Shown piece after piece: positions 5,357-64,000 of a stretch of DNA of 64,000 nucleotides; position 1 is the first letter of the stretch, and every line of letters starts with the position of its first letter. The stretch is from Podarcis bocagei (lineage: Eukaryota). A program made the translations under genes and the position numbers. Where the stretch lies: assembly GCA_964188305.1 (NCBI GenBank), contig OZ076892.1; one strand, written 5' to 3'. The notes below the pieces were generated by a model. It made no database searches and had not been told where the DNA came from. It worked only from the letters and a program-made list of their open reading frames with translations.

Positions 5357-5879
5357 GGTGGGGGGAGGTGGTACATATACTGGGACTTTTCCTCAATTTT
5401 GATATGGGTTTTGTACACTGGGAATTATTCCCAGACACCAAACCCATGCTCACGCCACCCCCAATATCACTGAGAATCACATTTAACCCATAAGCGTACA
5501 TCGAAAGGGTGAAAAAGAAATCCTGTCCTCTTTGCCTCTCTTTAACGGTCCTGGCTGCAAGAAAGGAGGGATATCTAATCTGTGTTAAGGGGTAACTAAT
5601 CCATGTTAAGGGGTCTGGAGTATGCCCCCTATGATAAGGGAAATTTGAGAAACGGGTGTGTACAGGGGGGGAGCTTCCGATGAACAATGGTCCCCTTCAA
5701 CAAACTACAAAGAAAAGAAAGGGTGGGGGACAGGGGGCAGAAAGGGAGAGGAATAGGGGACACTGGAATTTGCAGTGAGATATTATTTTGGAGGGATAAA
5801 ACTGAAGCAGGGATGATAAATAGGATTAATATGATGGGGTGTGGGGAACCAGCCCCCAAGCTGCAGCATCCCTTCCCAT

Positions 5880-6250
5880 CCCCCAGCGGCTGCGCTTTGT
5901 TGGGGGGGGGCATCCGTCAGCCCAAGCGCCTGACAATGAAAATGGTTTCGAGCCACGGCTGCCGATCGATACTGTGCAGGGGGAGAGAGGGGGGCTGGAG
6001 CTACGGCAGGGCCAGGCCTCTCGCTCACTCGCTGGCTCTCTCGCCCTCCCCCCCACCTTTTCCACCCGACGATTTCTCCCTTCTCCTCGCTTCAGACGCA
6101 TTTCATTTTCTTTCCTATTCCATTCCCTGGTTTCTGCGTTGCAGCAGACTGGGGGGTGGTGGAATGGTGGGGGGGGGCAGGTGACATCCCCACCCTGTCT
6201 AGTCTCTCTCTCTTTCTCCTCTCCCTCTCTCTGTGTCACGATTTCGCAGT
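5880..6250 (-). promoter_or_regulatory. CpG-rich candidate proximal promoter
   Basis: Local CpG enrichment and GA/CT-rich tracts upstream of the 5356 candidate exon. Confidence 0.4.
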
Positions 6251-6940
6251 TCTCAGCATGCCTTGGCAAAGCTATAATAGTAATAATAATTTTTTTCAAC
6301 AAAAAAAAGCAATAACAGCAGCAAAACCTGGGGGAACAGCTGGACTTATTTCCTTCTCCCCCCCCCCCACCCTACACCATTAAACTAAAACCTGGACCAA
6401 GAACCAAGAAGTGACCAAAATCCCTTCTCTCTGGCCTCCAGAAGCCACTTACAAAGAGGCAGGTACCTCCACCGCCATCCTCAGTGGTGCAGGTGGGAGG
6501 AAGACTCCCTGCCAAGGTCACACAAATACAATGGCTGAGCTGGAAGCAGCGGCACAAGTCCTAATTCCCACCCCTCTCTCTAGCCCCACACTGTGCCACA
6601 AACCCATGGGTTTAGCTAGTCCACTGAAGACCCCATTCGCTCTCCTAGAGGTGGGAACAGCCCCCAAAGGTCAAGAGCTGAATCCCTGTCTTAGACAGGG
6701 ACTAGGCCAAGTTCTGCTTCCTTAGCAAACCCACCCGGCTTACCACAGTGTTCTCCACCAGTCGTATTTGCCCAGGAGTCTGATGCTGTCTCTTCTTCCC
6801 TAAATCCCCTTTTCCATCTTCCTACGTATCTGATCTTGGGCACCTTTATCTCCTTCTCCATCTCCCATTCCCCTAATGCCTAGTGCTACATGTATTCCTC
6901 TGCCTTCAACTACACACCTCCTCTCTCTATATAAACCCAC

Positions 6941-6984
<44 letters not shown>
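6941..6984 (+). repeat. (TTTC)n microsatellite
   Basis: Seen directly. Confidence 0.95.
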
Positions 6985-6986
<2 letters not shown>

Positions 6987-7412
6987 CTCCACATTCCACC
7001 TTCTGCCTCCCTTTGTCTTCAAAGCATTTCCCTAAGTCCATGTCTTTCCACTTGAGTCTTCCCTATACCCCGTCCTCACAAGACATCAGCCAGCCCTCAA
7101 ACTCACCTCCTGCCCTTCCCAACTAGTGTGGCTGTGTGTACACATTACATGCTTGAAAGGCTGCTCTTTGTCTCAATTCGGATCAAAGCCGGATTGGGAG
7201 GAAACGCATCAAAATGCAGTCTTTCATGAGAATCGGCAGAATAAATATGGATTGTGTCTAACATTGCGCATATACCACTTCCCAAACCAGCGGGGGGGGG
7301 GGAGGTGTCACTGGATGAAGAGTAAATAGGAGGGTATGCACAGACTGTATTGGTGCACACAGTATTCCCATCCTCACCAACAACCTTGTGAGGCAGCTTA
7401 AGCTCAGAGAGA

Positions 7413-7733
7413 GGGCTTGTCCACACCGCAACGATATGTGAATTTGTGACTGTCTCCCCATTAATGCAAGGGCGCAGTCACATGACATTCTCCCCATGCC
7501 AGTGTTTCTCACACCTTTCCCTTTTAAATTGCTGGGTGTTCTTTTGCAATCCTTAGAAAGTCTAAAATACCCAAGAACAACAAAAAAAAACCAAACCTGA
7601 ATTTAAAGGGGTGGGGGAAGGTCCTGCACAACATTAGGGTGGGGAGGACATAATGTTGGACACCCGCCAACATTAATAAGGAGACAGGTAGGTGCAAATG
7701 CACATTCCACTCTTGTGTAGTATGGACAAGCCC
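7413..7733. mobile_element. Palindromic MITE (PIF/Harbinger-like), TIR GGGCTTGTCCAYAC
   Basis: gggcttgtccacac...gtatggacaagccc; internally similar to the copy at 3210. Confidence 0.7.
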
Positions 7734-8479
7734 ATAGAATCTTGCCCCCTTCCAAAGAGTTTTGTGGCCGAGTAGGCATTTGAGCTTGGGTTTCCCACAT
7801 CCAAATCCACTACACCACATTGGTTTACTCTACAGTAGGTTGAAAGCTCTGTACTGTGCAGCAAGAGTGAGCAGAAGATAAATTGGGATCTACTGACAGG
7901 CTTTTCGCAGTAGAGCAGCAAGTGTTTCTGGCTCCCAGTTATTTAACAAGAGCAACAACAAAATGAGCCCCCCTTCCCACAGTTGAACTGCTGAAATGAA
8001 CAAAGCTTGGGGTCACTAGGAACAGATTTTTGTGTGGAGGGACTGTGAGTTCAGCTCAGTTCTGAAACTCAAAACGAATCCATTAGCTCGGCCGTTGTTC
8101 AGAGGCACCATGTTCTTTAATTCTACATCTTCTGCACCTGGTTGCAAAAGGTGGGTTTGCGGCTGCTAGTAAAACGCAAAGTAGATCCCATACTGTAAGT
8201 CTAAGGCCTGCCCTTCCCTGTTGTCCAGCACCCAGGACATACTGCAGCAGAATTAATATTAATGTCAGCTGCCCACCTTCTGCTTTTGCCCACCCACCCT
8301 GGGCCTCAAACCTCTCCCCGAAAGAATTTTGCAATCACAATGGCAGGCTGTTCACAACACTGGAGCCAGAAGACAGAATGTGTCGTTTGGGGAAAAGGTG
8401 GCTTCCTCTCTGTTGCCTATTGTGGGTTCAGGTGTTACCCCTAAAACAGGCTCACAACAACATGATCTCAAGCAAGCAC

Positions 8480-8580
8480 CTCTTCTCTCAATTTCGTTTC
8501 CCAGCTGTAAAATGGGAAGAGCGGCAACCCATCTTGCAGGGTTGTTGATGTGCAGATCACAAAGGCTGCAAAGTACTTTA
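8480..8580 (+). mobile_element. Ancient MIR/CORE-SINE remnant
   Basis: tttcccagctgtaaaatggg...cttgcagggttgttg resembles the MIR core. Confidence 0.5.
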
Positions 8581-8990: not shown

Positions 8991-11710
8991 ACACCCATGG
9001 GACACCCATGGATTAGCATGGGGCCCGCAACCCATTGGGGCGTTCTCCAGCACAGCCTCATTTAAAGGAACAGGAGCTGTGTAAGAGGACTACTCACATT
9101 TTATTTCAGTTGGACCTAGGTGAGATAGCTTGCCAGAAGATTTCCCTGTCACTCTGCCACCTTTGGTGACTTCCCACATCTACCACCCAAGACAGCCACT
9201 TAATAGGGTTGTCCTCCCCTGAAGCCTGGGCCCGTTCCCCAAATTCTCCCCATGACCAGTCTCATCTGTAGGCACTCGTCACACAATGCACTCAAGAGGA
9301 GACACACCCTTGCACTGAAATGCATCTGTGCCCTGTTTTGCAAAGGACATAGAGACCTGGAGGGTGGGTGGCCATGCCAGCCAACGCATAAGTGTTTCTG
9401 CCAGTGGAGCATGTGCACCAAATTCCCTGTGTACATGTGATAGTGTGGTTTCTCTGTGCCAAGACGAGGACCTGCAAGGCGCTGGCCCTTGCTGGCTTTC
9501 GGCGACTGGGCCTCATGCTCCACCTCCTCCACACAATTTGCCCGATTGCCAGACCTGTCCGTCAGGCCCGCGTCGGCCGCTAGGAGCCATGCTGCGAGGT
9601 GGGGACGCTGCACCCTCAGGGGGTCGAGAGTAGGGTCGGGGGGGTCAAGGCAAACCCCCTCCTAAAACAAAGGGGGTAGTCCTATCTCTCCCCCCACCCC
9701 CCGTGCCAGAACAGGGAGATTTCCAATGTCTCTGTCTTGGGGTGGAAGGGGGGAAACACCACACCTGCTCTAACCACTAGGAGAACAACCCTCCACACAA
9801 AACCATATAAAGTGAACTCTAACTCATGTCAGACAGAACCTGGATACAACTCAGACCTTATATATGTGTGAGGAACAGATGCAGCAGGAAACAAACTTTC
9901 TGTCCTTGACTAGGGGGGAAGGCACACAACTCTCTGGGCTTATGGTTGCCATCTCCTCCTCACCCCTTGTCCTGGGTCTGCTCCCATGCCACTAAAAGCA
10001 GGCTGACACACAACACCCGCAGCTCTACCTAACACTCATCTCTATACCAAATGGAGCTTCACCTGATATATTTCAATGTATCAGGTTGCCATGAAATGCA
10101 CAGGAGTAGCAACCAGAAGAAAAGGTGGCAACCCTGCTCAGATCCACTTCCCATCCCAATGAACCAGCAGTTTCCCTTTGACTTTGGGCTGCGAGCAAAG
10201 CCCACCTGCCTAAACCTGCTAATTCCCATTCTCTGGATTTTCCAAGGCAAGCGCTGAACACCAGGTGCTCGGTGCTGACAGAAACTGACCCCCAACTGAC
10301 AATATGTGGGGAGAAAAGGGGGATATGAAAGCAGAGCTTTCAGGGAAAGCAGAGCAATAGCCTCCCAGCCATAGAGTCACTGCTGCTTAATGGGAGGGGG
10401 AAGCAAGAAGCAAAGTTGGGGCTCCCCCAGTGCTTCCACCTCCCTCCCCCCCCCCTCCCGCTGCCGGCTGCCCAAGATCCAGCCTTTTTTCTGAGGCTGG
10501 CAAGGAAGCAGCACCCCCCATCACTCCTGCTGGCGGCCAGGCCTGTCCTAGTAGAGCAGGCTCTGAGTTGCCAGTAATTAAAACCCTGTTAAACTTCATT
10601 AAGCAGCTCCACTTCCAACCTCATTAAATGATGATGAGGGGAGAGAGAGAGAGAGCGAGCAGGAAAGAGCGTGCGTAAATGTGATCACTCTCTAAACCTC
10701 AGCTTGATCAATCGCTTATCTGCTCTTTCTTTCTTTCTTTCTTCTTTCTTTCGTTCTTTCCATTTCATACCTGGGTCCTTTATTTTGTCCCCCTCTTAAT
10801 ACAGAAGCTAGGAACCCACATGATCTAGCCTCATTGTGTAATGTAAAGAGGATTAAAGCTTCACACAATAACTGAGTATAGGGTGTGTGTTTAAATAACA
10901 TGCTGTAGTCTAGAACAGGCATGGGCAGGATTGATTTTGGGGTTGGGGGGTTGCCTAGACCCCCGCCCCTAGTGTCGACCAAGCAAAGCCACCTGTGTGG
11001 TGGCAGCTCAGCGTCAGAGCCTCTTAATGATCCACATCACCCCTTACATCTCGTGCCTACAGAAGCAAAAACCTACATCTGAGCTACTAAAAAACAGAGA
11101 TTTTAACAGCCTGTTGGGTTTTGTTTTTTTAAGTATTTCTTCATTGTTTCTGAGTCATAAAGTGTTCCCAAATTACATCAGATAAGCCAATGATTTACCA
11201 TTAATGTCTGTAAGGGAGCATTTCAAAACTCCACAGTTCTTCACAGTGGCCCTCCCACCCACCACTCCCAACATACCAGCATGAAAACGTTCCAGCTCCA
11301 AGATTCTTAACCACAAAACTTCCCAAAGTGTCAGATTCCAAAGTTCTAAACTAGGAGTAGACAACCGGTGGGCCAGGAACTTAATCTGACCCCCTGAAGC
11401 TTTCCATCTGGCCCCCTTTGCCAACACAAAAGAGTGAGTCAGTAGCCCTCTTCAACCTGTTCAAAGGACACTGTGGGAATAAACTATGGAGGTCCTGGGC
11501 ACTGGCCCTGCCCTCAGTACTGCAAGGGTGGTGTGGCTTTGGCAGACCAGCACCAGGTTCATTTGCAGCAGACAACTGTAAAAGCAACTGGACCAGTCTT
11601 CCCTGTTTCTACCCCCATCCCCACTTACTACATACCCACCCACCCACCATGGGATTAGTTGCATGTTTGGCTGAATACACGAAGAAACCTTCTGGCAATC
11701 AGGAATCCTC

Positions 11711-12496
11711 TGTGGAGGATTCCCTGGTCCTGAATGGGGTAACTGTGCCCCTGAAGGACCAGGTGCGCAGCCTGGGAGTCATTTTGGACTCACAGCTGTC
11801 CATGGAGGCACAGGTCAAATCTGTGTCCAGGGCAGCTGTTTACCAGCTCCATCTGGTACGTAGGCTGAGACCCTATCTGCCTGCAGACTGTCTCGCCAGA
11901 GTGGTGCATGCTCTGGTTATCTCCCGCTTGGACTACTGCAATGCGCTCTACGTGGGGCTACCTTTGAAGGTGACGCGGAAACTACAACTAATCCAGAATG
12001 CGGCAGCTAGACTGGTGACTGGGAGCGGCCGCCGAGACCATATAACACCGGTCTTGAAAGACCTGCATTGGCTCCCAGTACGTTTCCGAGCACAATTCAA
12101 AGTGTTGGTGCTGACCTTTAAAGCCCTAAACGGCCTCGGTCCAGTATACCTGAAGGAGCGTCTCCACCCCCATCAGTCTGCCCGGACGCTGAGGTCCAGC
12201 GCCGAGGGCCTTCTGGCGGTTCCCTCACTGCGAGAAGCAAAGCTACAGGGAACCAGGCAGAGGGCCTTCTCGGTAGTGGCGCCCGCCCTGTGGAACGCCC
12301 TTCCAGCAGATGTCAAAGCGATAAACAACTATCTGACATTCAGGAGACATCTTAAGGCAGCCCTGTTCAGGGAAGTTTTTAACGTGTGACATTTTATTGT
12401 ATTTTTGGTTTTTATGGAAGCCGCCCAGAGTGGCTGGGGAGGCCCAGCCAGATGGGCGGGGTATAAATAATAAATTATTATTATTATTATTATTAT
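11711..12496 (+). mobile_element. Young 5'-truncated L2-clade LINE (ORF2 C-terminus + 3'UTR + (TTA)n tail)
   Basis: Translation VRSLGVILDSQLSM...SRLDYCNALYVGLP...LQLIQNAAARLV...HITPVLKDLHWLPV...RAFSVVAPALWNALP is typical L2 ORF2; uninterrupted to TGA at 12389; 3' stem-loop and (TTA)n tail. Confidence 0.95.
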
Positions 12497-22010: not shown

Positions 22011-24996
22011 AAGTCCACTGATTTCACCGGGTCTACTCTGTGTATGACAAACACTGGATATCACCCAATACATCTGGGGAGTTTAAATAAAATCATAGCA
22101 ACCTTCATCACTGCCAAATTCTTTCTCATCTTTCTGGCACTTAATATTACAAAGACGGGTGCCTACTGTCTGAAGAACAGCTCTGACCAGCTCAAAAGCT
22201 TGCAACCTTATGCCATCACCAAAACTGGTGAAATGAAGGTATTACCTACATGGATCTTTAAAGTTTCCAAAGACAACATTAAAAACTAGAAGCAACACAC
22301 TAAAAAGGCATGTTCCTAAACCTTAAAAAAAATCTTTTTCAAAATGTATTATTTTTTTGAATAGAGACATCACAATTTGAAATGCATGTTCTATCTACCA
22401 TGGGTTCTTTTATTTGACTTATGGAGCTAGGTAATGCTAAAAATGCAAAAGCAGCCTAGATCACAGCCTAAATCACAGGCAAAAACATGAACTGGATATA
22501 CGTGTCACTGTAAACAGACCACAAGACACTAAGGAGGCAGAACCTTGTGTAGAGATACCAGTGGCAAACACTCCTGCAAAAAAACACATTCACACATTGC
22601 ATGCAGGAGGGCATGGTGTAACTATCCTACAGCCACGGGATGCTTGTCCAACCATCTGGGCCTCTGCCTCCCACTCAGCTGACCAAGTACATATTATCAC
22701 GCCCAGAAAAGAAAAGGAAAACTGATTCCCAATAACGTTAAGTTCCCCTGAATTGATCTTAGTACCTAAAACCTTGATGGCTGCCCCATGGAGTTTTACT
22801 TTATGGTTATTTTGCCAGTGCACAACACAAATGTAACATGCCAAGACAAGGTCCACAATGCGCATTTCCCCCTCGTGCACAGCCATCCAGGTTCCACACC
22901 CACCACGAAAAGAACTTTGGCTGGCTTTGTGCCATCCCACGACACCCCACATCCAGACCTAGATGTAGAAGGCGCCAAGGATGGAAGGATGGACACACAC
23001 CAAACACACTGACTTCTCTGACCAGAGAGAGAGAGAGAGAGAGAGAAAGAGAGGGAAGGAAGGAGCATGAGAGGGTGGAGGTGGGGGCAGTTACTACAGG
23101 CTGGAAAATCGATTTCTGCCTCTGAACAAGCTTCGCTTCCCAGATCTCCGGGTTCATTAGCACGGACTGGGCTTGACACCAATACAATTTCCACACCGCG
23201 CTGGCTGCAGCAGAGCAGGGGGGGAGGGGTGTGCATGCAGGGCCAGCTCTGCAAAGCCACTTCTCTGAACCCCCACCACCCACCCGCCAGCCATAGAACG
23301 TGTCAGAAACAGATTATAAAACTGCCTCCTGTCGTTCCCCCCTCCCTTTGGGTCGCCCCGTTCTTGCCTTTACCCTTTCTCAGGGGTTGCTTCTCTTCCT
23401 ACCCACTGATGCACCAATGCCCACATTTCTCTTCATGCCCTGACCCTTCCCTATCCCTGATACTCCTAAATCTCCAGCTGTCAGGTCTACCAAGGAAAGG
23501 AAGCTCTCCCAGAGTATAGTTGGTTAGAGTAGGGGAAATCAGTCATCAGGACGCCTGGGTTCTCTCCCATGAGGTGGGGAGCGGGAGGGGAAGGGGAAGA
23601 AGGAGATCTACCAGTCAGCGGTTATTGCTAAATTTTTCATTAATAAGCATCCACATCCCACCCCAAAAATATCACTGCCGTCCCAGTTCTTACCCAGATT
23701 CTTACCCAGCACATTCCATATAATCCACTGCCTCATAATTTTAGGAGGCAGAAGAGAATTTTCCCCCAAGGTCACCTAGAAAAGCCCTTCATAGACCTCG
23801 GGAGCCCCAGCTCTGGAGACAGCCCTCCCCTACCTCCCTTCTCTAACTACTAGACCCCCATGCACCCCCCTCTCCCCTGTTCTGAAGGCCCACCACTTCA
23901 AAGGAACACATCCCCACTTATCATTTGAGTTCACCGTCCATAGTCTAATGGTCGAGAGGTGCAATCCAAAAGTCTATTTTTAAGATGCGCCCAGACATAA
24001 TAGTGAGGTGTGTAGATGGGGGGGAGCATAGCAGAATGAAATAGCTTGACACAGGGGGGCCAGAGGAACTATACATCTTACGCTGACAACAAACAGTAAC
24101 TAGAATACAGAGGAAATGTCTAAAATCGGAAGAGGGGAGCAGTGAGCCACAAAGCAGACCCCAAATGCTGTGGGGTGTTAGGGGGGACATAAATCCCCCT
24201 TAAACACAAGGCAACGGTCCTGTTTCATTTCCCATCTGAAGCACCCCATCTCAAGGAAGACAGAGAATCTGAACTATTCACAATTCCAGAATTTAACTTG
24301 CAGAATTGGTGGGTGGAGGAGGGTGGGCATAAGCAGACACGGGGTGGGGGGAACTAGTCAAACTTCAACAGGAGCTTATTGTTAGAAGCATTTGACTAGA
24401 TGTGGGGAAGATTTGGAGGGAGGATCTGAAGCATAAAACCAGAAAATATTGGTGGGGTGTTTGGCATGATTGCACTAGAGTAACCATTTACCAGGGTTGC
24501 ACCTGAAACTCGAACAGGATATTATTGGGGGACAATTGATGAAAAGGGGTACTTATGGGAGGCTGTGAACAATTTGACAGAACTGGCTGGCATTGGAGAA
24601 GAGGCAGGTGGGGTTATTTGGGGGCACCTTCCCAGACTGGATCTCACAGGTGCTTTCTGCCCACCCCCACCCCCTAATTCTCTCTGGGCTAGAAAAATCC
24701 TCCCCCACCAGCCCACCACCTGCCTAGCCCTAAACCTTACTTGGTGTTTCCCATATACCGAACAGAGGAAGAACCTCATAGGGAAATAATAGCAATATTA
24801 TAAAAATAACTTGATGATTGGGGTGGGAGCAAAGGCTTCACCGGTTCCCCCCACCCAGCAAAAGTGAAAGTGGGGGGTCTCTCTTTTCTTTTTTTCCTCC
24901 CCCTTTCTTTTTTCTCTTTTTTGCCCAGTCTTCTTCCACCGGCGTCTGCGTGCTGTTGGTTTCGGCGGCTGCCTTTGGCTTCTTTTCCCTGCTTAC

Positions 24997-25120
24997 CACC
25001 CACCCCCACCGACCCCCACCCCCTCCGTCTATCGACCGCAGGATGCCGGCGCCGGAGGTTCGATACGGAGCAGTGACACTCCGGATCAATACCGCATGAA
25101 TAAAAACCCCGCTCGCCCAT
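24997..25120 (-). CDS. Candidate alternative first coding exon (MGERGFYSCGIDPECHCSVSNLRRRHPAVDRRRGWGSVGVG, phase 1)
   Basis: Strong Kozak context GCGGAGATGG at 25120; 124 nt open to donor GTG|GTAAGC (cttac 24992-24996); same phase as the 25341 exon; CpG-rich. No homology recognised. Confidence 0.35.
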
Positions 25121-25340
25121 CTCCGCTTTCTTCCTCTCCCTCTTTCCCCTTTTTCTCCCCTCCTTTCCCCCTCTTTCTCTCTCTCTCTCTTCTCGCCTGC
25201 AAGAGTTGGTGGCATCTCTCTCATTCTCTCTCTCTCGTCTTTTTCTTTCCCCCTTTCCCTTCCTTTTCCCCATTATGTTCCTTGCTGACTTGCCGGCTGC
25301 TTTCTTTCTCTTGCCGCCCCCTACACCCCCTTCTTCTTAC

Positions 25341-25440
25341 CGTTTGCAGAGCGCAGGGCGAGCGGCGACTTGAGGCGCCATCCGTTCTCCGGGCCGGCGG
25401 ATCTTTGGAAGACCAAGGGGACCGGCAGTGGGATGAACAT
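25341..25440 (-). CDS. POU2F2: Alternative first coding exon of POU2F2/Oct-2 (33 codons + 1 nt; MFIPLPVPLVFQRSAGPENGWRLKSPLALRSAN)
   Basis: Seen: ATG at 25440, open frame to a strong donor ACG|GTAAG (cttac at 25336-25340), phase 1 ending in G, inside a CpG-rich patch; possible acceptor CAG at 25452-25450. Recalled, not searched: teleost pou2f2 isoforms begin MFVPLPVP..FQR...WRLKSPLA.RS and then (D/E)IRMSKP, and the human first-exon/exon-2 junction is also phase 1 (G|AA ATA AGA ATG). Octamer clusters in the window fit a POU2 locus. Confidence 0.75.
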
Positions 25441-25855
25441 GTCGGGGACCTGTGAGTGACACTCCGCATAACCCCACGGAGGGAAAAAAATATAAATATA
25501 TATATAAAAGGGTGGGTGGGTGAGTGGAGAGAAAGGGGTGGCGGGTGGGCGAAGTGGGGGGGGACACATACACACACACGCTGGACAGGTGACGATCGAC
25601 CGAGGATGACAATCAACCCAGGGTGGGGGGGGAGTGGAAATCTCTCTCTTCTCTCTCTCTCTCTCTCTCCCCCCCCCCTTCGACACACACTGCTCCGCTT
25701 TCTGCACTTACACACGTGCGTGCATGGGTGTGTGCACGGGCAAGTGCGTGTGTGTTTGTCCGTGCTGCAAGGACGTGTGAGGTTTGGGCACTACAGCCGG
25801 ACAGTGTGCATCGTTTTAAGGCTTTTGCAGAAAAGGAAAAGGGGGTGCGAGTGCG

Positions 25856-36320: not shown

Positions 36321-36974
36321 AAGTGATGGCAGGGGGCAGTTGGGGAGGGGAAAGGGGGGGGAACCCCAGTCTGGCACGAAAGCACTTGAAAGCTAGAGGA
36401 AGCGTGTGCGGAAAAGGCGGGGGGGGGGATCCCGGCATCTTCTGCTCGCTGTTTCCCTTTGGGAAGGAGCTCCGCTTGTTGCGTTTCTTATTCCTGCTCG
36501 CTGAGTTCTTAGCATGAGCTTCCTCTCCGTGCCTTTCTGGGGTTGCAGATTTGGGGTTTGGGGGTTCTACGCCTACCTCCTGGTGTGTGGACTGGGAACA
36601 TCCAGCATCACGACGGCTCGACTCTTTTCCTGCAGCCCTAGAAGGAGCTGCAGACGCCGTAGTTAGGTGGAGGAGATGAACTGGCCTTGCCAACAGCTGA
36701 TCCGGAGGGTCGGCCACAAAGGCACTTTTTCAGCCCCCTTCCCCTGTGGCCGCTCGATGCATGGGCCTAGGAACAGCAGGGCTTAGGGTGTTGATTCCCA
36801 TCTTCCACACCACTGTTCAAGGTGCAAGAACCATATCCTCTTTTGCATTTGCATCGCCCAAGATGGAAGGAAGGAGGTAAGGAGGGCCTTGGCAGATGTT
36901 GGAAAGGGTGTAAGCTGTAGCAAGCAGGGCATATGCAGCGCAGGTGGGAGAATGAAAGAGCAGAAACCCCACCA

Positions 36975-38625: not shown

Positions 38626-38793
38626 NNNNNNNNNNNNNNNNNNNNNNNNNNNNNNNNNNNNNNNNNNNNNNNNNNNNNNNNNNNNNNNNNNNNNNNNNNN
38701 NNNNNNNNNNNNNNNNNNNNNNNNNNNNNNNNNNNNNNNNNNNNNNNNNNNNNNNNNNNNNNNNNNNNNNNNNNNNNNNNNNNNNNNNNNNNN
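38626..38793. other. Assembly gap (168 N)
   Basis: Run of N. Confidence 1.
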
Positions 38794-39495: not shown

Positions 39496-39634
39496 GCCTA
39501 GCTCAGTTGGTAGGGCATGAGACTCTTAATCTCAGGGCCGTGGGTTTGAGCCCCGTGTTAGGCAAAAGATTCCTGAACTGTAGGGGGTTGGACTAAATGA
39601 TTGCCATGGTCCCTTTCAACTGCACAATTCTATG
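39496..39634 (+). mobile_element. tRNA-Lys(CTT)-derived SINE
   Basis: tagctcagttggtagggcatgagactcttaatctcagggccgtgggtttgagcccc retains the CTT anticodon loop, followed by the same tail. Confidence 0.85.
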
Positions 39635-54383: not shown

Positions 54384-54951
54384 ATGCAATTTGTTTGCAT
54401 CTGAAAATGTCGATGCAAATCTATGCAAACATATTTAGAAACAGAGTTATTATTTATGGCCTACCACTTCATTCCTGTTAAGGCTCTTTTTAAAAACTGC
54501 AGGCAGCGGGCCCGATCGGCTGTTTCACAATAGTCCTTTTACACTGCATAAGTGCTTTGAAGTGCTCTTGGTGTAATGGAAAATGAAGGACGCAATGTAG
54601 TGATGTATATTATTTATAGGTTTGTAAATCGATCCCTTTATATTTATTGAACTGTATTCTGGAGATAGATACCGGATATTATTGATACGGATGAATGTAT
54701 TTACTGACTGATCCTGTTATTGATAGATCCATTACAGACGCTCAAAACAAAAGACACTTTCAAATGTGGAATTATATGTAGAGTTAACTCGTTTTGTTTT
54801 CATTATTGGAGCACTGATCTTGTTTTTTACAGATGTGTTGATCTCGAGCAAGGCATCTGCTATTTAGGACAGGTGTATATATTTGCATAATACTGTACTG
54901 TACTGATAGGGAAAGGCAAACTGAGGGACTTTACATACAAATCTTCAATTG

Positions 54952-55004
<53 letters not shown>

Positions 55005-55340
55005 TAACTGCTATACCTACAATTCCAAAAGGTTCTGTTTTAAAGATACTGTACAGGCTGGATGTATCTTGATACATCCATTTACAAATCAATCTGCTGT
55101 TTACGGATTAACTGGATCTATATATTTACAAGCAAATCCATCTTTTTCTAGCTACATTTTAAAAACTTTTCAACAACTGTCATTTATAACTACCCTTATT
55201 GATTTGCAAAAAGATCGTTATATTTACATCTGGAAGATGCAGATTTAAAAATAAATTATCTAATGGGGAAATCAAGTTTTAGAAAGAGTGGTAATTAAAT
55301 TGACTGCCTCCCAGTTAACATGCATCGATTTGTAAATGAA
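54384..55340. promoter_or_regulatory. Candidate intronic enhancer: octamer quartet plus Onecut/Forkhead-like motifs
   Basis: ATGCAATT 54384, GTTTGCAT 54393, ATGCAAAT 54413, ATGCAAAC 54423, ATTTGCAT 54881; ATYGATTTGYAAA three times at 55080-55337; TRTTTAC at 54698, 55098, 55123, 55221. Confidence 0.55.
54953..55001 (+). repeat. (TA)n microsatellite
   Basis: Seen directly. Confidence 0.95.
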
Positions 55341-59472: not shown

Positions 59473-61381
59473 CGCCAAGGATATGCCAGGCTCTGGGACA
59501 GCAGACCAGAAGGCATCCCTCAATTCGCTCACTCTCTAAAAACTCAAGAAACAGAAATAGCATCTGTTTTGGAAAACTGGGACGGTGTTCCAACTTGGCC
59601 TGGGAGACAGCTATCGCACCAAACCTGAATTTGGGGAGTAGGTGGCTCTGGATTTGGGGGTTCAGGACGGCTGAAGGTAACAGCCACACCCCTAGATCCA
59701 TTAATCTTAACCCTATTCTTAGGAGATGTGTTCCCTCCTATCTCCCTTCCTCACATCCCACACACGCAATTTCGAAATTTTTGTCCATCGTTCTTTTGGC
59801 TCTATCTTTCTGTCTCTCTCTGCCCCACTGAATCCAGACCACTGAACCCCCTTCCTTTACCAGGAGCTCCCCTCTCTTCTATCCAGCGGTCTCCTTTCTT
59901 TCTTACCCAACTCTCCTCCCTGCCTCAGCCACACACCCTACCCCCCCATATCCACCTCCTCTCACCTTCCCCTCATATAGGTCCCCTTCTCATACACTCC
60001 CCCACCCCGAAAAAAACACAGCCCCGTCAGAATCTGACCTCTTCACCCATCCAGCCACTACCCCAGGTCTCCCCTGCGCCCCCCCCCACGCTCCCACCTC
60101 CTCCAGATCCTGGCAATATCTCTCCCTCCACACAATAGCTGCCATGGGCTGCTAATAATTATTAATAACATTCTTCCTTTCCTCCCTCTTCTCCACCCCC
60201 ACCCCGTCCATGGACAAAAGAAGAGTCCAGTTCTCGTTGTATGTATCTGCCTCCCCCTCCTCGCTTCGGCCATTGCACCTTCTTCCCCCCCCTCCAACAA
60301 CCTTCACTTTCTCCCCCCCCCCCACCGGTTCTTTGGACAATCCAAACCATTCCATCTTCGGTTCGCACACACACACCCCGCATTATGCAACTTGAGTTTA
60401 TAATAGAGAGGGGTCTAATATACTCACTTATATCCCAATAAACACAGGACACCCCCCTTAGTGTATGAAAGCAATCGCTGCTAATGCACAGCACAACCCC
60501 CCCCCCTTTTCGGGGGCGGGCGGCGGGGGGGTTAGGAATCCAAATATTGCAACACATTTCCTAACAATATATGCCCGCTTTGCAAAACCGTAAACGCCGG
60601 AGCCACAACCCCCCATCTCCTCAGGTTCCTTCTGTCTATTCCTTCTTTTTTCCCCTCCCTTCTTTCTTCCATCGCCAGAGCATCAAAAGCCGAGCCACCG
60701 CCACCGAAAAGCAGAGAGACATTTACAGAAAATCCTCTACAGCGTTTTCTCTGTCTTCTGATTTTATTTTCATCCGTGCAAAAAAAACCTATATAGATAT
60801 ATATTTTTTAAACATTCGCTCAGTGCACAAAGCCATTTGCAAAAGGAAAGAACGGCCAGCAAATATCATTTTTTGCCATTGCAAAAAACGCCTCCCCTTT
60901 GCAATGAATAAAAATGCCCTTTAAAAACACGCCTGTATCATTTTTGCATTTTATTTGTTTTTGTAAAAAAATAAAAATAAAATGCATTTTTATATATGCA
61001 TCTCTCCGTTATTATTTTTCCCTCTTTGCAATTTTTTTTGTCCGTTTCCTTAAAGGCTGAGCCACAGACACCAGCAAAAATAATATGCCAGGGAGAGGAA
61101 AAAAAGAAAGCTCTTGGAAGGAACAATTGCAGCTGCTGTGTTGAGAGACGAAGAGAGAGAAAGGAATAGACTGCCTTGTGTGTGTGTGTGTGCGTGTGTG
61201 TGTGTGTGCAATAGACCAGCTGCTGCATTAAGCATTTTGCAATCAATAAAGAGCGGGTGAGATTTATGCAAAGCGCAGATATTAATATGCAAAGTTTTAA
61301 AGATTTTTAAATGGGAGAGAGAGGGAAGGAGACAGGGAGGAGGAGGCGGGGTGGGGGGGATTGCATAGAGACTGCACCTAC

Positions 61382-61427
61382 CTCTGCTTCCATCGGTGGG
61401 CGCAAGCTGACTCCTCCATGCGCGCAT
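61382..61427 (-). CDS. Candidate coding end of the distal first exon (MRAWRSQLAPTDGSR, phase 1); may instead be a non-coding 5'UTR exon
   Basis: Donor GAG|GTAGGT (acctac 61376-61381) just downstream of a CpG-island promoter. The ATG at 61427 gives 46 nt (phase 1); ATGs at 61419 and 61393 give phases 2 and 0. Confidence 0.35.
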
Positions 61428-61720
61428 GGGTGCAGCCCAGATACACAGGGGCTGAGGGGGAAGCAGCAGCAATAGCAGAAGCGGCGGCGGCGGCGGCGGC
61501 AGCAGTCAGAGCGCGAGCCAGGGCGCGCGCCGGATTCTCTCCATCATTTCCCCCCTCCCCTCCCCATTCCCCGGCTACGGTTGCCCGGGCAACGAGAAAG
61601 ATGCAGCAGCATCAGCACCAGGATGAAAGATGCTCAGGGCAGCAACAGCAGATGGGGATGGAGATGGGGCGCGCGTGAAAGGGAGCCCTGATTGGAGGGG
61701 GGAGCAGATGGGAGGGAAGA
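61382..61720 (-). promoter_or_regulatory. CpG-island distal promoter and first exon with CCAAT box and RFX X-box
   Basis: CpG-dense; CCAATCAG on minus (ctgattgg 61688-61695); perfect palindromic X-box GTTGCCCGGGCAAC 61580-61593; (GCG)n 61481-61500; splice donor at 61381. Confidence 0.65.
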
Positions 61721-64000
61721 AATAAGAGGAGCTTCCGAATTTTAGAGTGGGGGGGGGGCTGTTTCCAAATTTGTTAAACTGAGGGACTGGGGGGGGAGCG
61801 GGTCTTTGGCAGAGGGAGAAAGAAAAATGCCCAGAGTGTTTTCAGCTGGGGCAGGGACGGGGGGAGGGTGGGGGGCGGGGGAGAAATGAAGGAAGGGGCA
61901 ATACAGAAAGGTGAGGGTTATTTACGATCTGGAAATGAGGTGTAGGGAAGGAGGGCATCAAAGTCGGGGGCATGAGAAAGGTGCTTCTGAACTTTAAGAC
62001 GGGTGGGGGGGCGGAATTATAAGATTCAGGACAGGGTTAGGGTAAAAAAGCCTTAGGAGTTGGGTGAGAGGGGAAAGCTCTCTTGAGTCCTAGAGCAGGA
62101 TGAGCCCCCCCCCCCCCGCTTAAAATGGGAAGGAAAATAGGAGTGGGAAAACGGCAGGACTTCGGAGAGTAGGAGAGGCTAATGGCGAGGTTCTATTTGG
62201 GCATGCTTAGGATCCTGGGGTGTATTGTATGCAGTGTGTGTGTGTGTGTGTGGTCTGTAAACACCTTCCTTCCGCCCTCTCCTTATTTTTCACCTTCACA
62301 CTATCACTAAATACAAAATTAGGAAGAGTTTTAATGCTCTATGCAACTATGCAAAAGTTTTCTTTCTACGTTGCTCCCGTCTGCATAGATCTGCCTTCTA
62401 GACAGAAATGGAGAGGAAATAATTCTGTGTAGTCTTTCACAAAGGGGCCATGAAAAAGACCTGGTGATAAAGAACGTAACCTTTTATAGAAACTGAAGGA
62501 CTTGTATAGATAATCCTAATTCAGAATTTAACATTTTGTCACGCAGGGAAAACATGCTGCCCACTTTGGAGATTTGAAATATGTAATTAGTATTCTGGGG
62601 AATCAAAGGTAATATAATCTGGACAGGAACATTGCTGAAGGGGATTAGGTGTTCTTGTAGAATGTTATACTCAGGATTTCAAATTATTGTATCCTGACTA
62701 GCAAGCGCAAAAGATGCATATAAGAAGTTATTATAAAAGAAGGTAGAGTAAAAACAATAAAAACAATATATAGAACAGATGTTAAGGATTAAATGTAAAA
62801 TTTGGTTTTAAAAACTGTTTGAAGTAGATGTTGGAGTTAAAAGCATTTTATGGAATAATAGTCTATAGTGGAAGTAACATGTACAAAGCCTTACATAACT
62901 AACCTGTTAATGAATTTAAATCTGACATTTTTGAAGTTAAAAGTCATATATGCTAAAATAATTAAGAGGTTTCCATGAAGTGCATATTAAGAAGTAGTAG
63001 TGCGACAATTTTAAAAAGAGAAAGTTATGTTTTTATGAATGCTTTTGAATAGCAAGATAGTCATACACTCTAAATAAGATTTTATTTAAATATGCAAAAC
63101 AGTCTTTTAAAATGCATATTTATGATCCATAGTATTACCTTGAAATCAATGAAAAATGCAGCTAATATTAAATGCTTTATGTAATTGTTGACCCACAGCT
63201 GAAATTACATTTACTTAGATTATACAAGTTCCTGCATGCTACTTAGAATTTAAATGTAAATAATCATGTGGCAAAACTGAATAATCTGTGCATTTTATTA
63301 TAGTACAATATATAGATTATTATGATTATATATATATATTTATATATATATATATATAGGCACACAACAAAATATTTAATTATTTCATTTGCAAGCAGAA
63401 CAATATCAAATGACATTCATACAATCAGCACAAGGTGAATATTACTCATTGGAAAACAAAATTAGTGGGTACATTTAGGAATATTTTATTTTAAATAAAG
63501 GATTTTATGTTCAATATGCAAAAACATTTCATGTAAAATCTATTCAAGGTAAACAATATTATATGCAAAGCAAAAAATTGAAAAACCCAATGGTGTTAAC
63601 TTCTAAGAATTGATCTGTAAAGAAAATGAAATTTATAAGATTACATATGTCACTCCAGATATTATAGTTATATGTAAATCCAAGTAAAGTTTTTGCATAC
63701 AGTGAAAAAAGAAAAAGCATATCAAACTGCAGTAATTAAAAGCGGATTGCTGTTGATAAATGAACATAGGTATAAAATTGAGAACTTTATATTTAATACT
63801 CATTGATTAATTTTCAATTGATGTTATATGTAAAGGAATTAGCATAGATTAGATACAAAATGTTAAAACCTAACAAAGTTTAAACTACTGGAAATATATT
63901 TTCAATCACTTGATATGAAGAATTAATATGAAAATATGCAAAATATTATTCAGTTTCTTTCACCAAATCCAGAATTTTAAGAATAATTCCCAACACCGAA

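What the first reader, a model, noticed from the sequence alone, without database searches (positions are those of the whole stretch)
61235..63945. Dense field of one-mismatch octamer sites around the Oct-2 gene's own distal promoter: candidate autoregulatory dosage sensor
Seen: TATGCAAA occurs 8 times in about 2.7 kb (61265, 61286, 62348, 63091, 63515, 63562, 63692 minus, 63935). Further variants include TATGTAAA (63671, 63827), ATGTAAAT (63254), TATGCTAAT (63838 minus), ATGCATAT and ATGTAATT. Six TATGCAAA fall in 62.3-64 kb, where a hand estimate at about 75% AT predicts about 0.15. Elsewhere I noticed this 8-mer only at 54.4-54.9 kb. All eight end in A or G instead of T (ATGCAAAA/G), and I found no perfect ATGCAAAT here. 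Known: POU2F proteins bind ATGCAAAT. Inference: a homotypic low-affinity cluster on both sides of the TSS would let Oct-2 or other POU factors regulate this gene in a concentration-dependent way.
Basis: partly seen in the sequence, partly recalled or inferred. Interest (0 to 1): 0.8.

Follow-up and report, generated by a model that had tools for sequence, protein, structure and literature searches.

The report
Octamer-like site cluster beside CpG island
A lizard DNA stretch next to a promoter-like CpG island really does carry far more copies of the POU-factor word TATGCAAA than chance allows, but nothing in the window shows that the gene is Oct-2 or that the sites feed back on it.

Summary
TATGCAAA occurs at all eight stated places. 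That is 8 in 2.7 kb against 0.3-1.4 expected, and 6 in the 27%-GC block 62.3-64 kb against 0.3-1.5 expected. It is the most repeated complex 8-mer in any 1.7-kb stretch of the window. The sites share no extended flanks, lie in no repeat visible in the window, and all eight carry the 5' T of the extended POU consensus. None of the ten ATGCAAA words in 1-54 kb does.

TATGCAAAA is the working Oct-1/Oct-2 site of the mouse Nos2 promoter. The field adjoins a CpG-island-like segment with a sharp GC-skew flip, which is the signature of a divergent promoter.

- No Oct-2 or POU-domain coding sequence lies in any frame of the window.
- The lack of a perfect octamer is not significant (P about 0.03-0.12).
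- Conservation, binding and autoregulation could not be tested.

Best reading: a real homotypic POU-type site cluster at an unidentified promoter. This is a known kind of element, of modest interest.

The parts
61265..61272 (+). TATGCAAA site 1 (ninth base G).
61286..61293 (+). TATGCAAA site 2 (ninth base G), 21 bp after site 1.
62340..62356 (+). Tandem doublet TATGCAAC + TATGCAAAA (site 3 at 62348)
   Evidence: D3; period 8
63091..63099 (+). TATGCAAAA site 4, followed 13 bp later by ATGCATAT (63112)
63515..63523 (+). TATGCAAAA site 5, with ATGTAAAA 18 bp downstream
63562..63570 (+). TATGCAAAG site 6
63691..63699 (-). TATGCAAAA site 7, the only one on the minus strand
63927..63943 (+). Tandem doublet TATGAAAA + TATGCAAAA (site 8 at 63935)
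   Evidence: D3, D8; period 9
62260..64000 (.). AT-rich block (GC 24-36%) that runs off the window end. It holds 6 TATGCAAA, and 14 octamer matches with at most one mismatch against 6-8.7 expected.
59700..62250 (.). CpG-island-like segment. CpG observed/expected is 0.5-0.94 against 0.32 for the window. GC skew is -0.5 to -0.75 up to 60.8 kb and +0.3 to +0.64 from 61.0 to 62.2 kb, a divergent-promoter-like signature.
60540..61252 (.). AT-rich valley at the skew switch.
54384..54430 (+). Distal packet of octamer sites, including a perfect ATGCAAAT (54413) and TATGCAAAC (54422). A perfect site also lies on the minus strand at 54882.

Best explanation
This is a real homotypic cluster of POU-class (octamer-type) binding words of the form T-ATGC-AAA-(A/G). 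It is spread over about 2.7 kb that adjoins and partly enters a CpG-island-like, probably divergent promoter of a gene that cannot be identified from this window.

Each site carries the full POU-specific half-site with its preferred 5' T (TATGC) and an A-rich, imperfect POU-homeodomain half-site. The likely mode of action is inferred, not shown. Ubiquitous Oct-1 and/or tissue-restricted POU factors would occupy several moderate-strength sites at once. They would then add activating or repressing input to the adjacent promoter. The packet at 54.4-54.9 kb, which does contain perfect octamers, would act as a further upstream or downstream enhancer of the same landscape.

Shown here: the enrichment, the independence of the sites, the invariant 5' T, and the promoter-like composition next door. 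Inferred: POU binding in this species, which gene is controlled, and the sign and dose-dependence of the effect.
For: - Enrichment survives dinucleotide, Markov-3 and Markov-4 nulls and a look-elsewhere correction for the whole field.
- It is the top complex 8-mer cluster in the 64-kb window and is absent from 7.5 kb of other AT-rich tiles.
- All 8 ATGCAAA words in the field have T at -1, against 0 of 10 in 1-54 kb (exact test about 2e-5). This fits the extended POU consensus rather than composition.
- The flanks of the six sites analysed are no more alike than random AT-rich positions (mean identity 13.5 of 40 against 12.1, P=0.08; maximum P=0.66). The sites are therefore not copies of a longer unit.
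- There is no similarity to the rest of the window and there are no terminal inverted repeats.
- TATGCAAAA is the OCT site of the mouse Nos2 promoter. It was mutated in reporters and used as an EMSA probe (PMC3891534). Oct-1 and Oct-2 both occupy the proximal iNOS site, and the POU-specific domain reads ATGC (PMC4787767).
- The adjacent segment meets CpG-island criteria and shows a GC-skew flip.
Against: - No binding, expression or conservation data could be obtained.
- No control sequence is as AT-rich as the block. A genome-wide matched background was impossible with 64 kb.
- Under the strictest null (Markov-4 plus look-elsewhere) the 62.3-64 kb subset alone has P=0.17.
- Two of the sites sit in 2-copy micro-tandems of period 8-9. 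That hints that slippage made some of the neighbouring half-copies.
- Seven of the eight sites are on one strand, which is unusual for orientation-free factor sites. It is partly explained by the A>T skew of the block.
Confidence: 0.45

Rival explanations
1. By-product of AT-rich sequence evolution with no function. The word would have been multiplied by local slippage or micro-duplication and by mutational bias inside a very AT-rich block that happens to lie beside a CpG island.
For: - TRF reports 2-copy micro-tandems exactly at two sites: CTATGCAA x2 at 62339-62354 and AATATGCAA x2.6 at 63925-63946.
- A similar doublet lies at 54413/54423.
- The strand bias is 7:1.
- The subset P is only 0.17 under Markov-4 with look-elsewhere.
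- Both very AT-rich parts of the window (54-55 kb and 62.3-64 kb) hold the word, as a compositional effect would predict.
Against: - Slippage explains the imperfect partner copies, not the six dispersed perfect copies. Their flanks are unrelated and their spacings are irregular (743, 424, 47, 130 and 243 bp).
- The whole-field enrichment is robust.
- The invariant 5' T is not expected from composition.
- Two further copies lie in the GC-richer promoter segment, outside the AT block.
Confidence: 0.3
2. The CpG island is the distal promoter of POU2F2 (Oct-2). The one-mismatch sites would form a deliberately low-affinity homotypic array through which Oct-2 senses and regulates its own dose.
For: - The cluster is real and lies beside a promoter-like segment.
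- A second CpG-island-like block with the same skew flip lies 36 kb away at 24.8-25.8 kb. It has a minus-strand exon-like start and a strong splice donor, which fits a distal and proximal promoter layout on the minus strand.
- In mouse retina Pou2f1 upregulates Pou2f2, and open chromatin 47 kb upstream of the Pou2f2 promoter is regulatory (bioRxiv 10.1101/2021.12.01.470829).
- The paralogue Oct-1 is reported to autoregulate through two octamer sites in an alternative promoter (Pankratova 2006, cited in PMC6057458).
Against: - No Oct-2 or POU coding motif occurs in any frame. The MVHSSMG start is absent.
- The candidate first exon at 25.3 kb found no relative.
- The absence of perfect octamers is not significant.
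- TATGCAAAA acts as a full working site in Nos2, so 'low affinity' is unproven.
- Any POU factor, most simply ubiquitous Oct-1, would bind the same words. Autoregulation therefore does not follow even if the gene is POU2F2.
Confidence: 0.1
3. The AT-rich block is an old, decayed interspersed repeat or a matrix-attachment-type AT island. In that case octamer-like words are part of the element's own sequence rather than promoter logic.
For: - The block has a sharp boundary at about 62.26 kb, next to a (GT)n run, and has uniform 24-30% GC to the window end.
- Earlier notes of this scan report hAT elements that carry octamer cassettes and captured CpG-island promoters in this genome.
Against: - No terminal inverted repeats bracket the island or the block.
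- There are no other copies in 61 kb and no internal repeat structure.
- There is no Rfam match.
- The block runs off the window, so its far end could not be seen.
Confidence: 0.12

Closest known systems
Octamer site of the Nos2 (iNOS) proximal promoter
   Same: It has the identical 9-mer, TATGCAAAA, with A in place of the consensus final T. It lies close to the core promoter and is bound by Oct-1 and Oct-2 (PMC3891534; PMC4787767).
   Different: Nos2 has a single site next to a TATA box. Here there are eight copies plus about ten variants over 2.7 kb, with no binding data.
Autoregulation of POU2F1 (Oct-1) through octamer sites in its alternative promoter (Pankratova et al. 2006, Biochimie 88:1323, cited in PMC6057458)
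   Same: A class II POU gene with two promoters, with octamer-type sites at a promoter and feedback by its own product.
   Different: I know this only from the citation and my own recollection, and I did not read it. It involves two sites, not a field. Here the gene is not shown to be a POU gene at all.
Homotypic clusters of low-affinity or suboptimal sites in enhancers (for example PMC9452512; the suboptimal OCT4-SOX2 site in a Klf4 enhancer, PMC11441684)
   Same: Several same-factor sites that depart from the optimum, clustered within about 1-3 kb. They are proposed to give graded or context-specific responses.
   Different: Those cases have measured affinities and reporter tests. I saw only their titles and abstracts. 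Here suboptimality is only assumed, and the lack of optimal sites is within chance.
Pou2f1 -> Pou2f2 cascade in mouse retinal progenitors (Javed et al. 2020, as described in bioRxiv 10.1101/2021.12.01.470829)
   Same: A POU factor raises Pou2f2 expression, and distal regulatory DNA tens of kb upstream of Pou2f2 is used.
   Different: This is cross-regulation rather than autoregulation. No cis sites are described in the text I read. It is relevant only if this locus is POU2F2.

Membership tests
POU-class octamer binding site (ATGCAAAT) | POU-specific half-site ATGC, preferably preceded by T | tested here: met
   All 8 sites read TATGC. None of the 10 ATGCAAA words elsewhere in 1-54 kb has the 5' T.
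POU-class octamer binding site (ATGCAAAT) | POU-homeodomain half-site AAAT | tested here: not met
   The final base is A (5 sites) or G (3 sites), never T. The sites are one-mismatch variants, not consensus octamers.
POU-class octamer binding site (ATGCAAAT) | The sequence has been shown to bind Oct proteins | tested here: inconclusive
   The same 9-mer, TATGCAAAA, is the functional Nos2 OCT site in mouse. There are no data for this lizard or for the G-ending form.
Autoregulated POU gene promoter | The controlled gene encodes the POU factor that binds the sites | tested here: inconclusive
   No POU-domain or Oct-2 N-terminal coding motif occurs in six frames of the window, and no convincing exon was found. 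The gene body may lie outside the window.
Autoregulated POU gene promoter | The sites lie at a mapped transcription start | not testable with these tools
Only compositional signs of a promoter are available.
Autoregulated POU gene promoter | The gene's own product occupies the sites and changes its transcription | not testable with these tools
   This needs ChIP or CUT&RUN and a perturbation experiment.
Homotypic transcription-factor site cluster | More same-motif sites within a few kb than a matched background gives | tested here: met
   8 observed against 0.3-1.4 expected. It is the top complex word in the window and is absent from 7.5 kb of AT-rich controls. A genome-wide GC-matched control was not possible.
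Homotypic transcription-factor site cluster | Sites are selectively kept suboptimal (optimal sites avoided) | tested here: not met
   Zero terminal T in 6-8 sites has P of 0.03-0.26 under local composition. T is equally rare after ATGCAAA elsewhere, 1 of 10.
Interspersed or tandem repeat | Copies share extended flanks or a regular period, and other copies exist | tested here: not met
   Flank identity equals that of random AT-rich positions. Spacings are irregular. There are no matches elsewhere in the window and no terminal inverted repeats. Only two 2-copy micro-tandems were found. Genome-wide copy number is untestable.
CpG-island promoter | GC above 50% and CpG observed/expected above 0.6 over more than 200 bp, with a GC-skew switch at the start site | tested here: met
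   The tiles 60201-60600 and 61201-61800 pass. Skew flips from -0.75 to +0.64 around 60.9-61.1 kb. Transcription itself is not shown.

The most novel reading that the evidence does not exclude
The field is a conserved, deliberately suboptimal POU-site array on both sides of the distal promoter of the lizard POU2F2 gene. Through it, Oct-2 together with Oct-1 would set its own level in a graded way. That would be an autoregulatory dosage sensor not so far described for Oct-2.
Probability: 0.06. Interest if true: 0.6.

Novelty: new member of a known kind. Interest (0 to 1): 0.3.

Why it matters
If the sites are functional, they mark a promoter or first-intron region under strong POU-factor input in a reptile. 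Together with the perfect-octamer packet 7-9 kb away, they would outline a POU-driven regulatory landscape. If the gene proved to be POU2F2, the array would be a concrete cis-element candidate for the Pou2f1-to-Pou2f2 cascade and for possible self-regulation, and its dose-response could be tested in a simple reporter series. As it stands, the result is a solid motif-enrichment finding of a familiar kind, with the gene unidentified.

Tried and rejected
- **Reads.** There is therefore no expression, start-site, splice or near-relative variation data. After that I sent no stretch of those places to a search tool. There were two slips. The findings tool widened my request 61319-64000 to 59819-64000 by itself. 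The generic 7-letter octamer core that I used as a find-term inside one paper also occurs in that place.
- **Gene identity.** Six-frame motif searches for the POU-specific domain, the POU homeodomain and Oct-2 N-terminal peptides found nothing. A scan for Q-rich segments also found nothing. Neither did a C2H2 zinc-finger regex for a neighbouring gene, or Pfam on the ten longest ORFs.
- **Exon search.** A home-made scan for splice sites plus codon usage gave only two exon-like starts on the minus strand, at the two CpG islands. The word search with the 79-aa ORF at 25.3 kb found no hits. I ran no further search on a 33-aa putative exon, because success was unlikely and the operators asked for restraint.
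- **Fetching related DNA.** Exact-ORF look-ups for three ORFs near the island were not on record.
- **Earlier findings.** These gave no gene name and no synteny words.
- **Rfam.** It found only a tRNA-like hit at 39.5 kb and nothing in 61319-64000.
- **Transposon reading.** I rejected this for lack of terminal inverted repeats or other copies.
- **Masked N stretch (38626-38793).** Its flanks show no splice sites. I did not try to fill it.
- **Alternative factors for the word.** C/EBP (TKNNGNAAK), forkhead, CDX/HOX and SOX/TCF consensus strings, recalled from memory, fit worse than the POU consensus. This was not formally scored, because no matrix library is available here.
- **Literature.** I found no paper that describes Oct-2 autoregulation through its own promoter.
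Full report
**Observation.** TATGCAAA occurs ten times in the 64-kb window. The other two are at 54422(+) and 54882(-). There is no perfect ATGCAAAT in 61235-63945. The listed variants are all present. The ninth base is A in five sites and G in three.

**Is it more than chance?** For 61235-63945 the expected count is 0.32 under dinucleotide-preserving shuffles. It is 0.79 under a third-order and 1.44 under a fourth-order Markov model trained on the region itself. None of 2000 simulations reached 8. The chance that any non-simple 8-mer reaches 8 is 0-1.3%.

For the AT-rich block alone (62300-64000, GC 27.4%) there are 6 copies against 0.32, 0.87 and 1.45 expected. The word-specific P is 0.0045 or less. 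After correcting for all possible 8-mers it weakens to 0.35%, 3.9% and 17%.

Real-sequence controls agree:
- Tiling the window in 1.7-kb pieces, only (AAGA)n and G-run words are more repeated than TATGCAAA.
- 7.5 kb of other tiles with GC<40% contain no copy.
- The more general count of octamer matches with at most one mismatch is only mildly raised, 14 against 6-8.7. The signal is therefore specific to this word.

**Independent sites, not a repeat.**
- Spacings are irregular.
- The block and the G-rich segment have no match elsewhere in the window beyond microsatellites, and no inverted terminal repeats bracket them.
- This scan has noted hAT elements with octamer cassettes and captured promoters in this genome, so I looked for that structure and did not find it.
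- Two sites do sit in 2-copy micro-tandems of period 8-9. These account for imperfect partner copies such as TATGCAAC and TATGAAAA.

**What the word is.** Of the 23 ATGCAAA heptamers in the window, all eight in the field are preceded by T. None of the ten in 1-54 kb is. TATGC is the POU-specific half-site with its preferred 5' base, and the POU homeodomain reads AAAT (PMC4787767). The sites are therefore full POU-specific half-sites joined to an imperfect homeodomain half-site.

The very same 9-mer, TATGCAAAA, is the OCT element of the mouse Nos2 promoter. There it was mutated in reporters and used as an EMSA probe (PMC3891534). [quoted passage not shown] So 'one-mismatch' does not by itself mean 'weak'.

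With the local frequency of T after AAA at 0.2-0.34, zero T in six to eight trials has P of 0.03-0.26. T is just as rare after ATGCAAA elsewhere in the window, 1 of 10.

**Surroundings.**
- The field adjoins a CpG-island-like segment. CpG observed/expected is 0.5-0.94 between 60.25 and 61.75 kb, against 0.32 for the window. The tiles 60201-60600 and 61201-61800 pass the usual criteria.
- GC skew is -0.5 to -0.75 from 59.7 to 60.8 kb and +0.3 to +0.64 from 61.0 to 62.2 kb. From established knowledge of CpG-island promoters, this pattern marks divergent transcription from about 60.9-61.3 kb.
- Strong splice-donor-like sites lie at 61910(+), 61382(-) and 59966(-).
- The AT-rich valley at the switch (60.5-61.26 kb) holds seven palindromic TTGCAA (about one expected) and ten TGCAAA/TTTGCA.
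- A second, similar CpG island with the same skew flip lies at 24.8-25.8 kb. On its minus strand an ATG opens 33 codons that end in a strong donor.
- The AT-rich packet at 54.38-54.43 kb and the site at 54882 carry perfect octamers.

**Gene identity.**
- No POU-specific or POU-homeodomain motif and no Oct-2 N-terminal motif occurs in any of the six frames. A published human Oct-2 primer confirms the MVHSSMG start that I searched for.
- A scan for splice sites plus codon usage found no convincing internal exon.
- The longest ORF (11418-12389) looks like the tail of a LINE protein (my recollection).
- Pfam was silent on the ten longest ORFs.
- The candidate first exon at 25.3 kb has no relative in the word search.
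- Exact look-ups of three local ORFs found nothing.
- Earlier notes of the scan name no gene here.

The window is thus essentially non-coding. It could lie upstream of POU2F2: mouse Pou2f2 has regulatory DNA 47 kb upstream. I found nothing that shows this.

**Reads.** The run search listed RNA runs of the species and DNA of close relatives. The tool states that this filter also trips by chance, so I draw no conclusion from it.

I worked beside those 56 bases afterwards. The two sites inside them are known only. There were two slips. The findings tool widened a request over them by itself. A generic 7-letter octamer core that I used as a find-term in one paper also occurs there.

**Conclusion.**
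- The best-supported reading (0.45) is a genuine homotypic cluster of POU-type sites at or beside an unidentified, probably divergent CpG-island promoter. Binding and effect are inferred.
- A non-functional compositional or slippage origin remains a serious rival (0.3).
- An old repeat or matrix-attachment-type AT island is less likely (0.12).

The closest known cases are the Nos2 octamer, Oct-1 autoregulation through octamer sites in an alternative promoter (cited in PMC6057458), low-affinity homotypic clusters (PMC9452512, PMC11441684) and the Pou2f1-to-Pou2f2 cascade. This is a new instance of a known kind of element, of modest interest unless the gene turns out to be POU2F2 and the sites prove to be conserved.

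Noticed in passing
window 60540-61252: Seven palindromic TTGCAA hexamers (about 1 expected, 0 of 2000 simulations) and ten TGCAAA/TTTGCA lie in the AT-rich valley exactly at the GC-skew switch. One abuts an ONECUT-type ATCAATAA at 61238-61252, echoing a TTGCAAATCAATAA composite on the minus strand near 55199-55212.
   Followed up: partly
window 24800-25800: A second CpG-island-like block (CpG observed/expected up to 0.98) has the same negative-to-positive GC-skew flip. On its minus strand an ATG at 25440 opens 33 codons that end in a strong donor (last exon base 25341). The word search found no relative.
   Followed up: partly
window 54384-54430 and 54882-54889: A packet of four octamer-type sites within 47 bp includes a perfect ATGCAAAT. 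A further perfect site lies on the minus strand at 54882. Apart from 36848, these are the only perfect octamers in the window.
   Followed up: partly
window 36842-36855 (minus strand): Overlapping ATGCAAATGCAAAA in a GC-rich stretch. It is the only perfect octamer outside 54.4-54.9 kb.
   Followed up: no
window 11418-12389 (+): A 323-codon open frame whose second half looks like the C-terminal tail of a LINE ORF2 protein (my recollection). Pfam gave only a sub-threshold chance hit.
   Followed up: partly
window 39496-39564 (+): Rfam tRNA match at 42.8 bits, but ARAGORN calls no tRNA there. It is probably a tRNA-derived SINE head.
   Followed up: partly
window 5500-8500: A long (AAGA)n-type microsatellite field, the most repeated 8-mers of the window.
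   Followed up: no
window 38626-38793: A masked or gap N run of 168 bases, followed by a long (AAT)n run. Its flanks show no splice signals. I left it untouched.
   Followed up: no
window 61732-61758 / 62106-62132: A 27-nt inverted pair (81% complementary, 347 nt apart) built around G10/C12 runs, with similar GAGTGGGGGGGGGGC-like words four times in 61.74-62.01 kb. The meaning is unknown.
   Followed up: no
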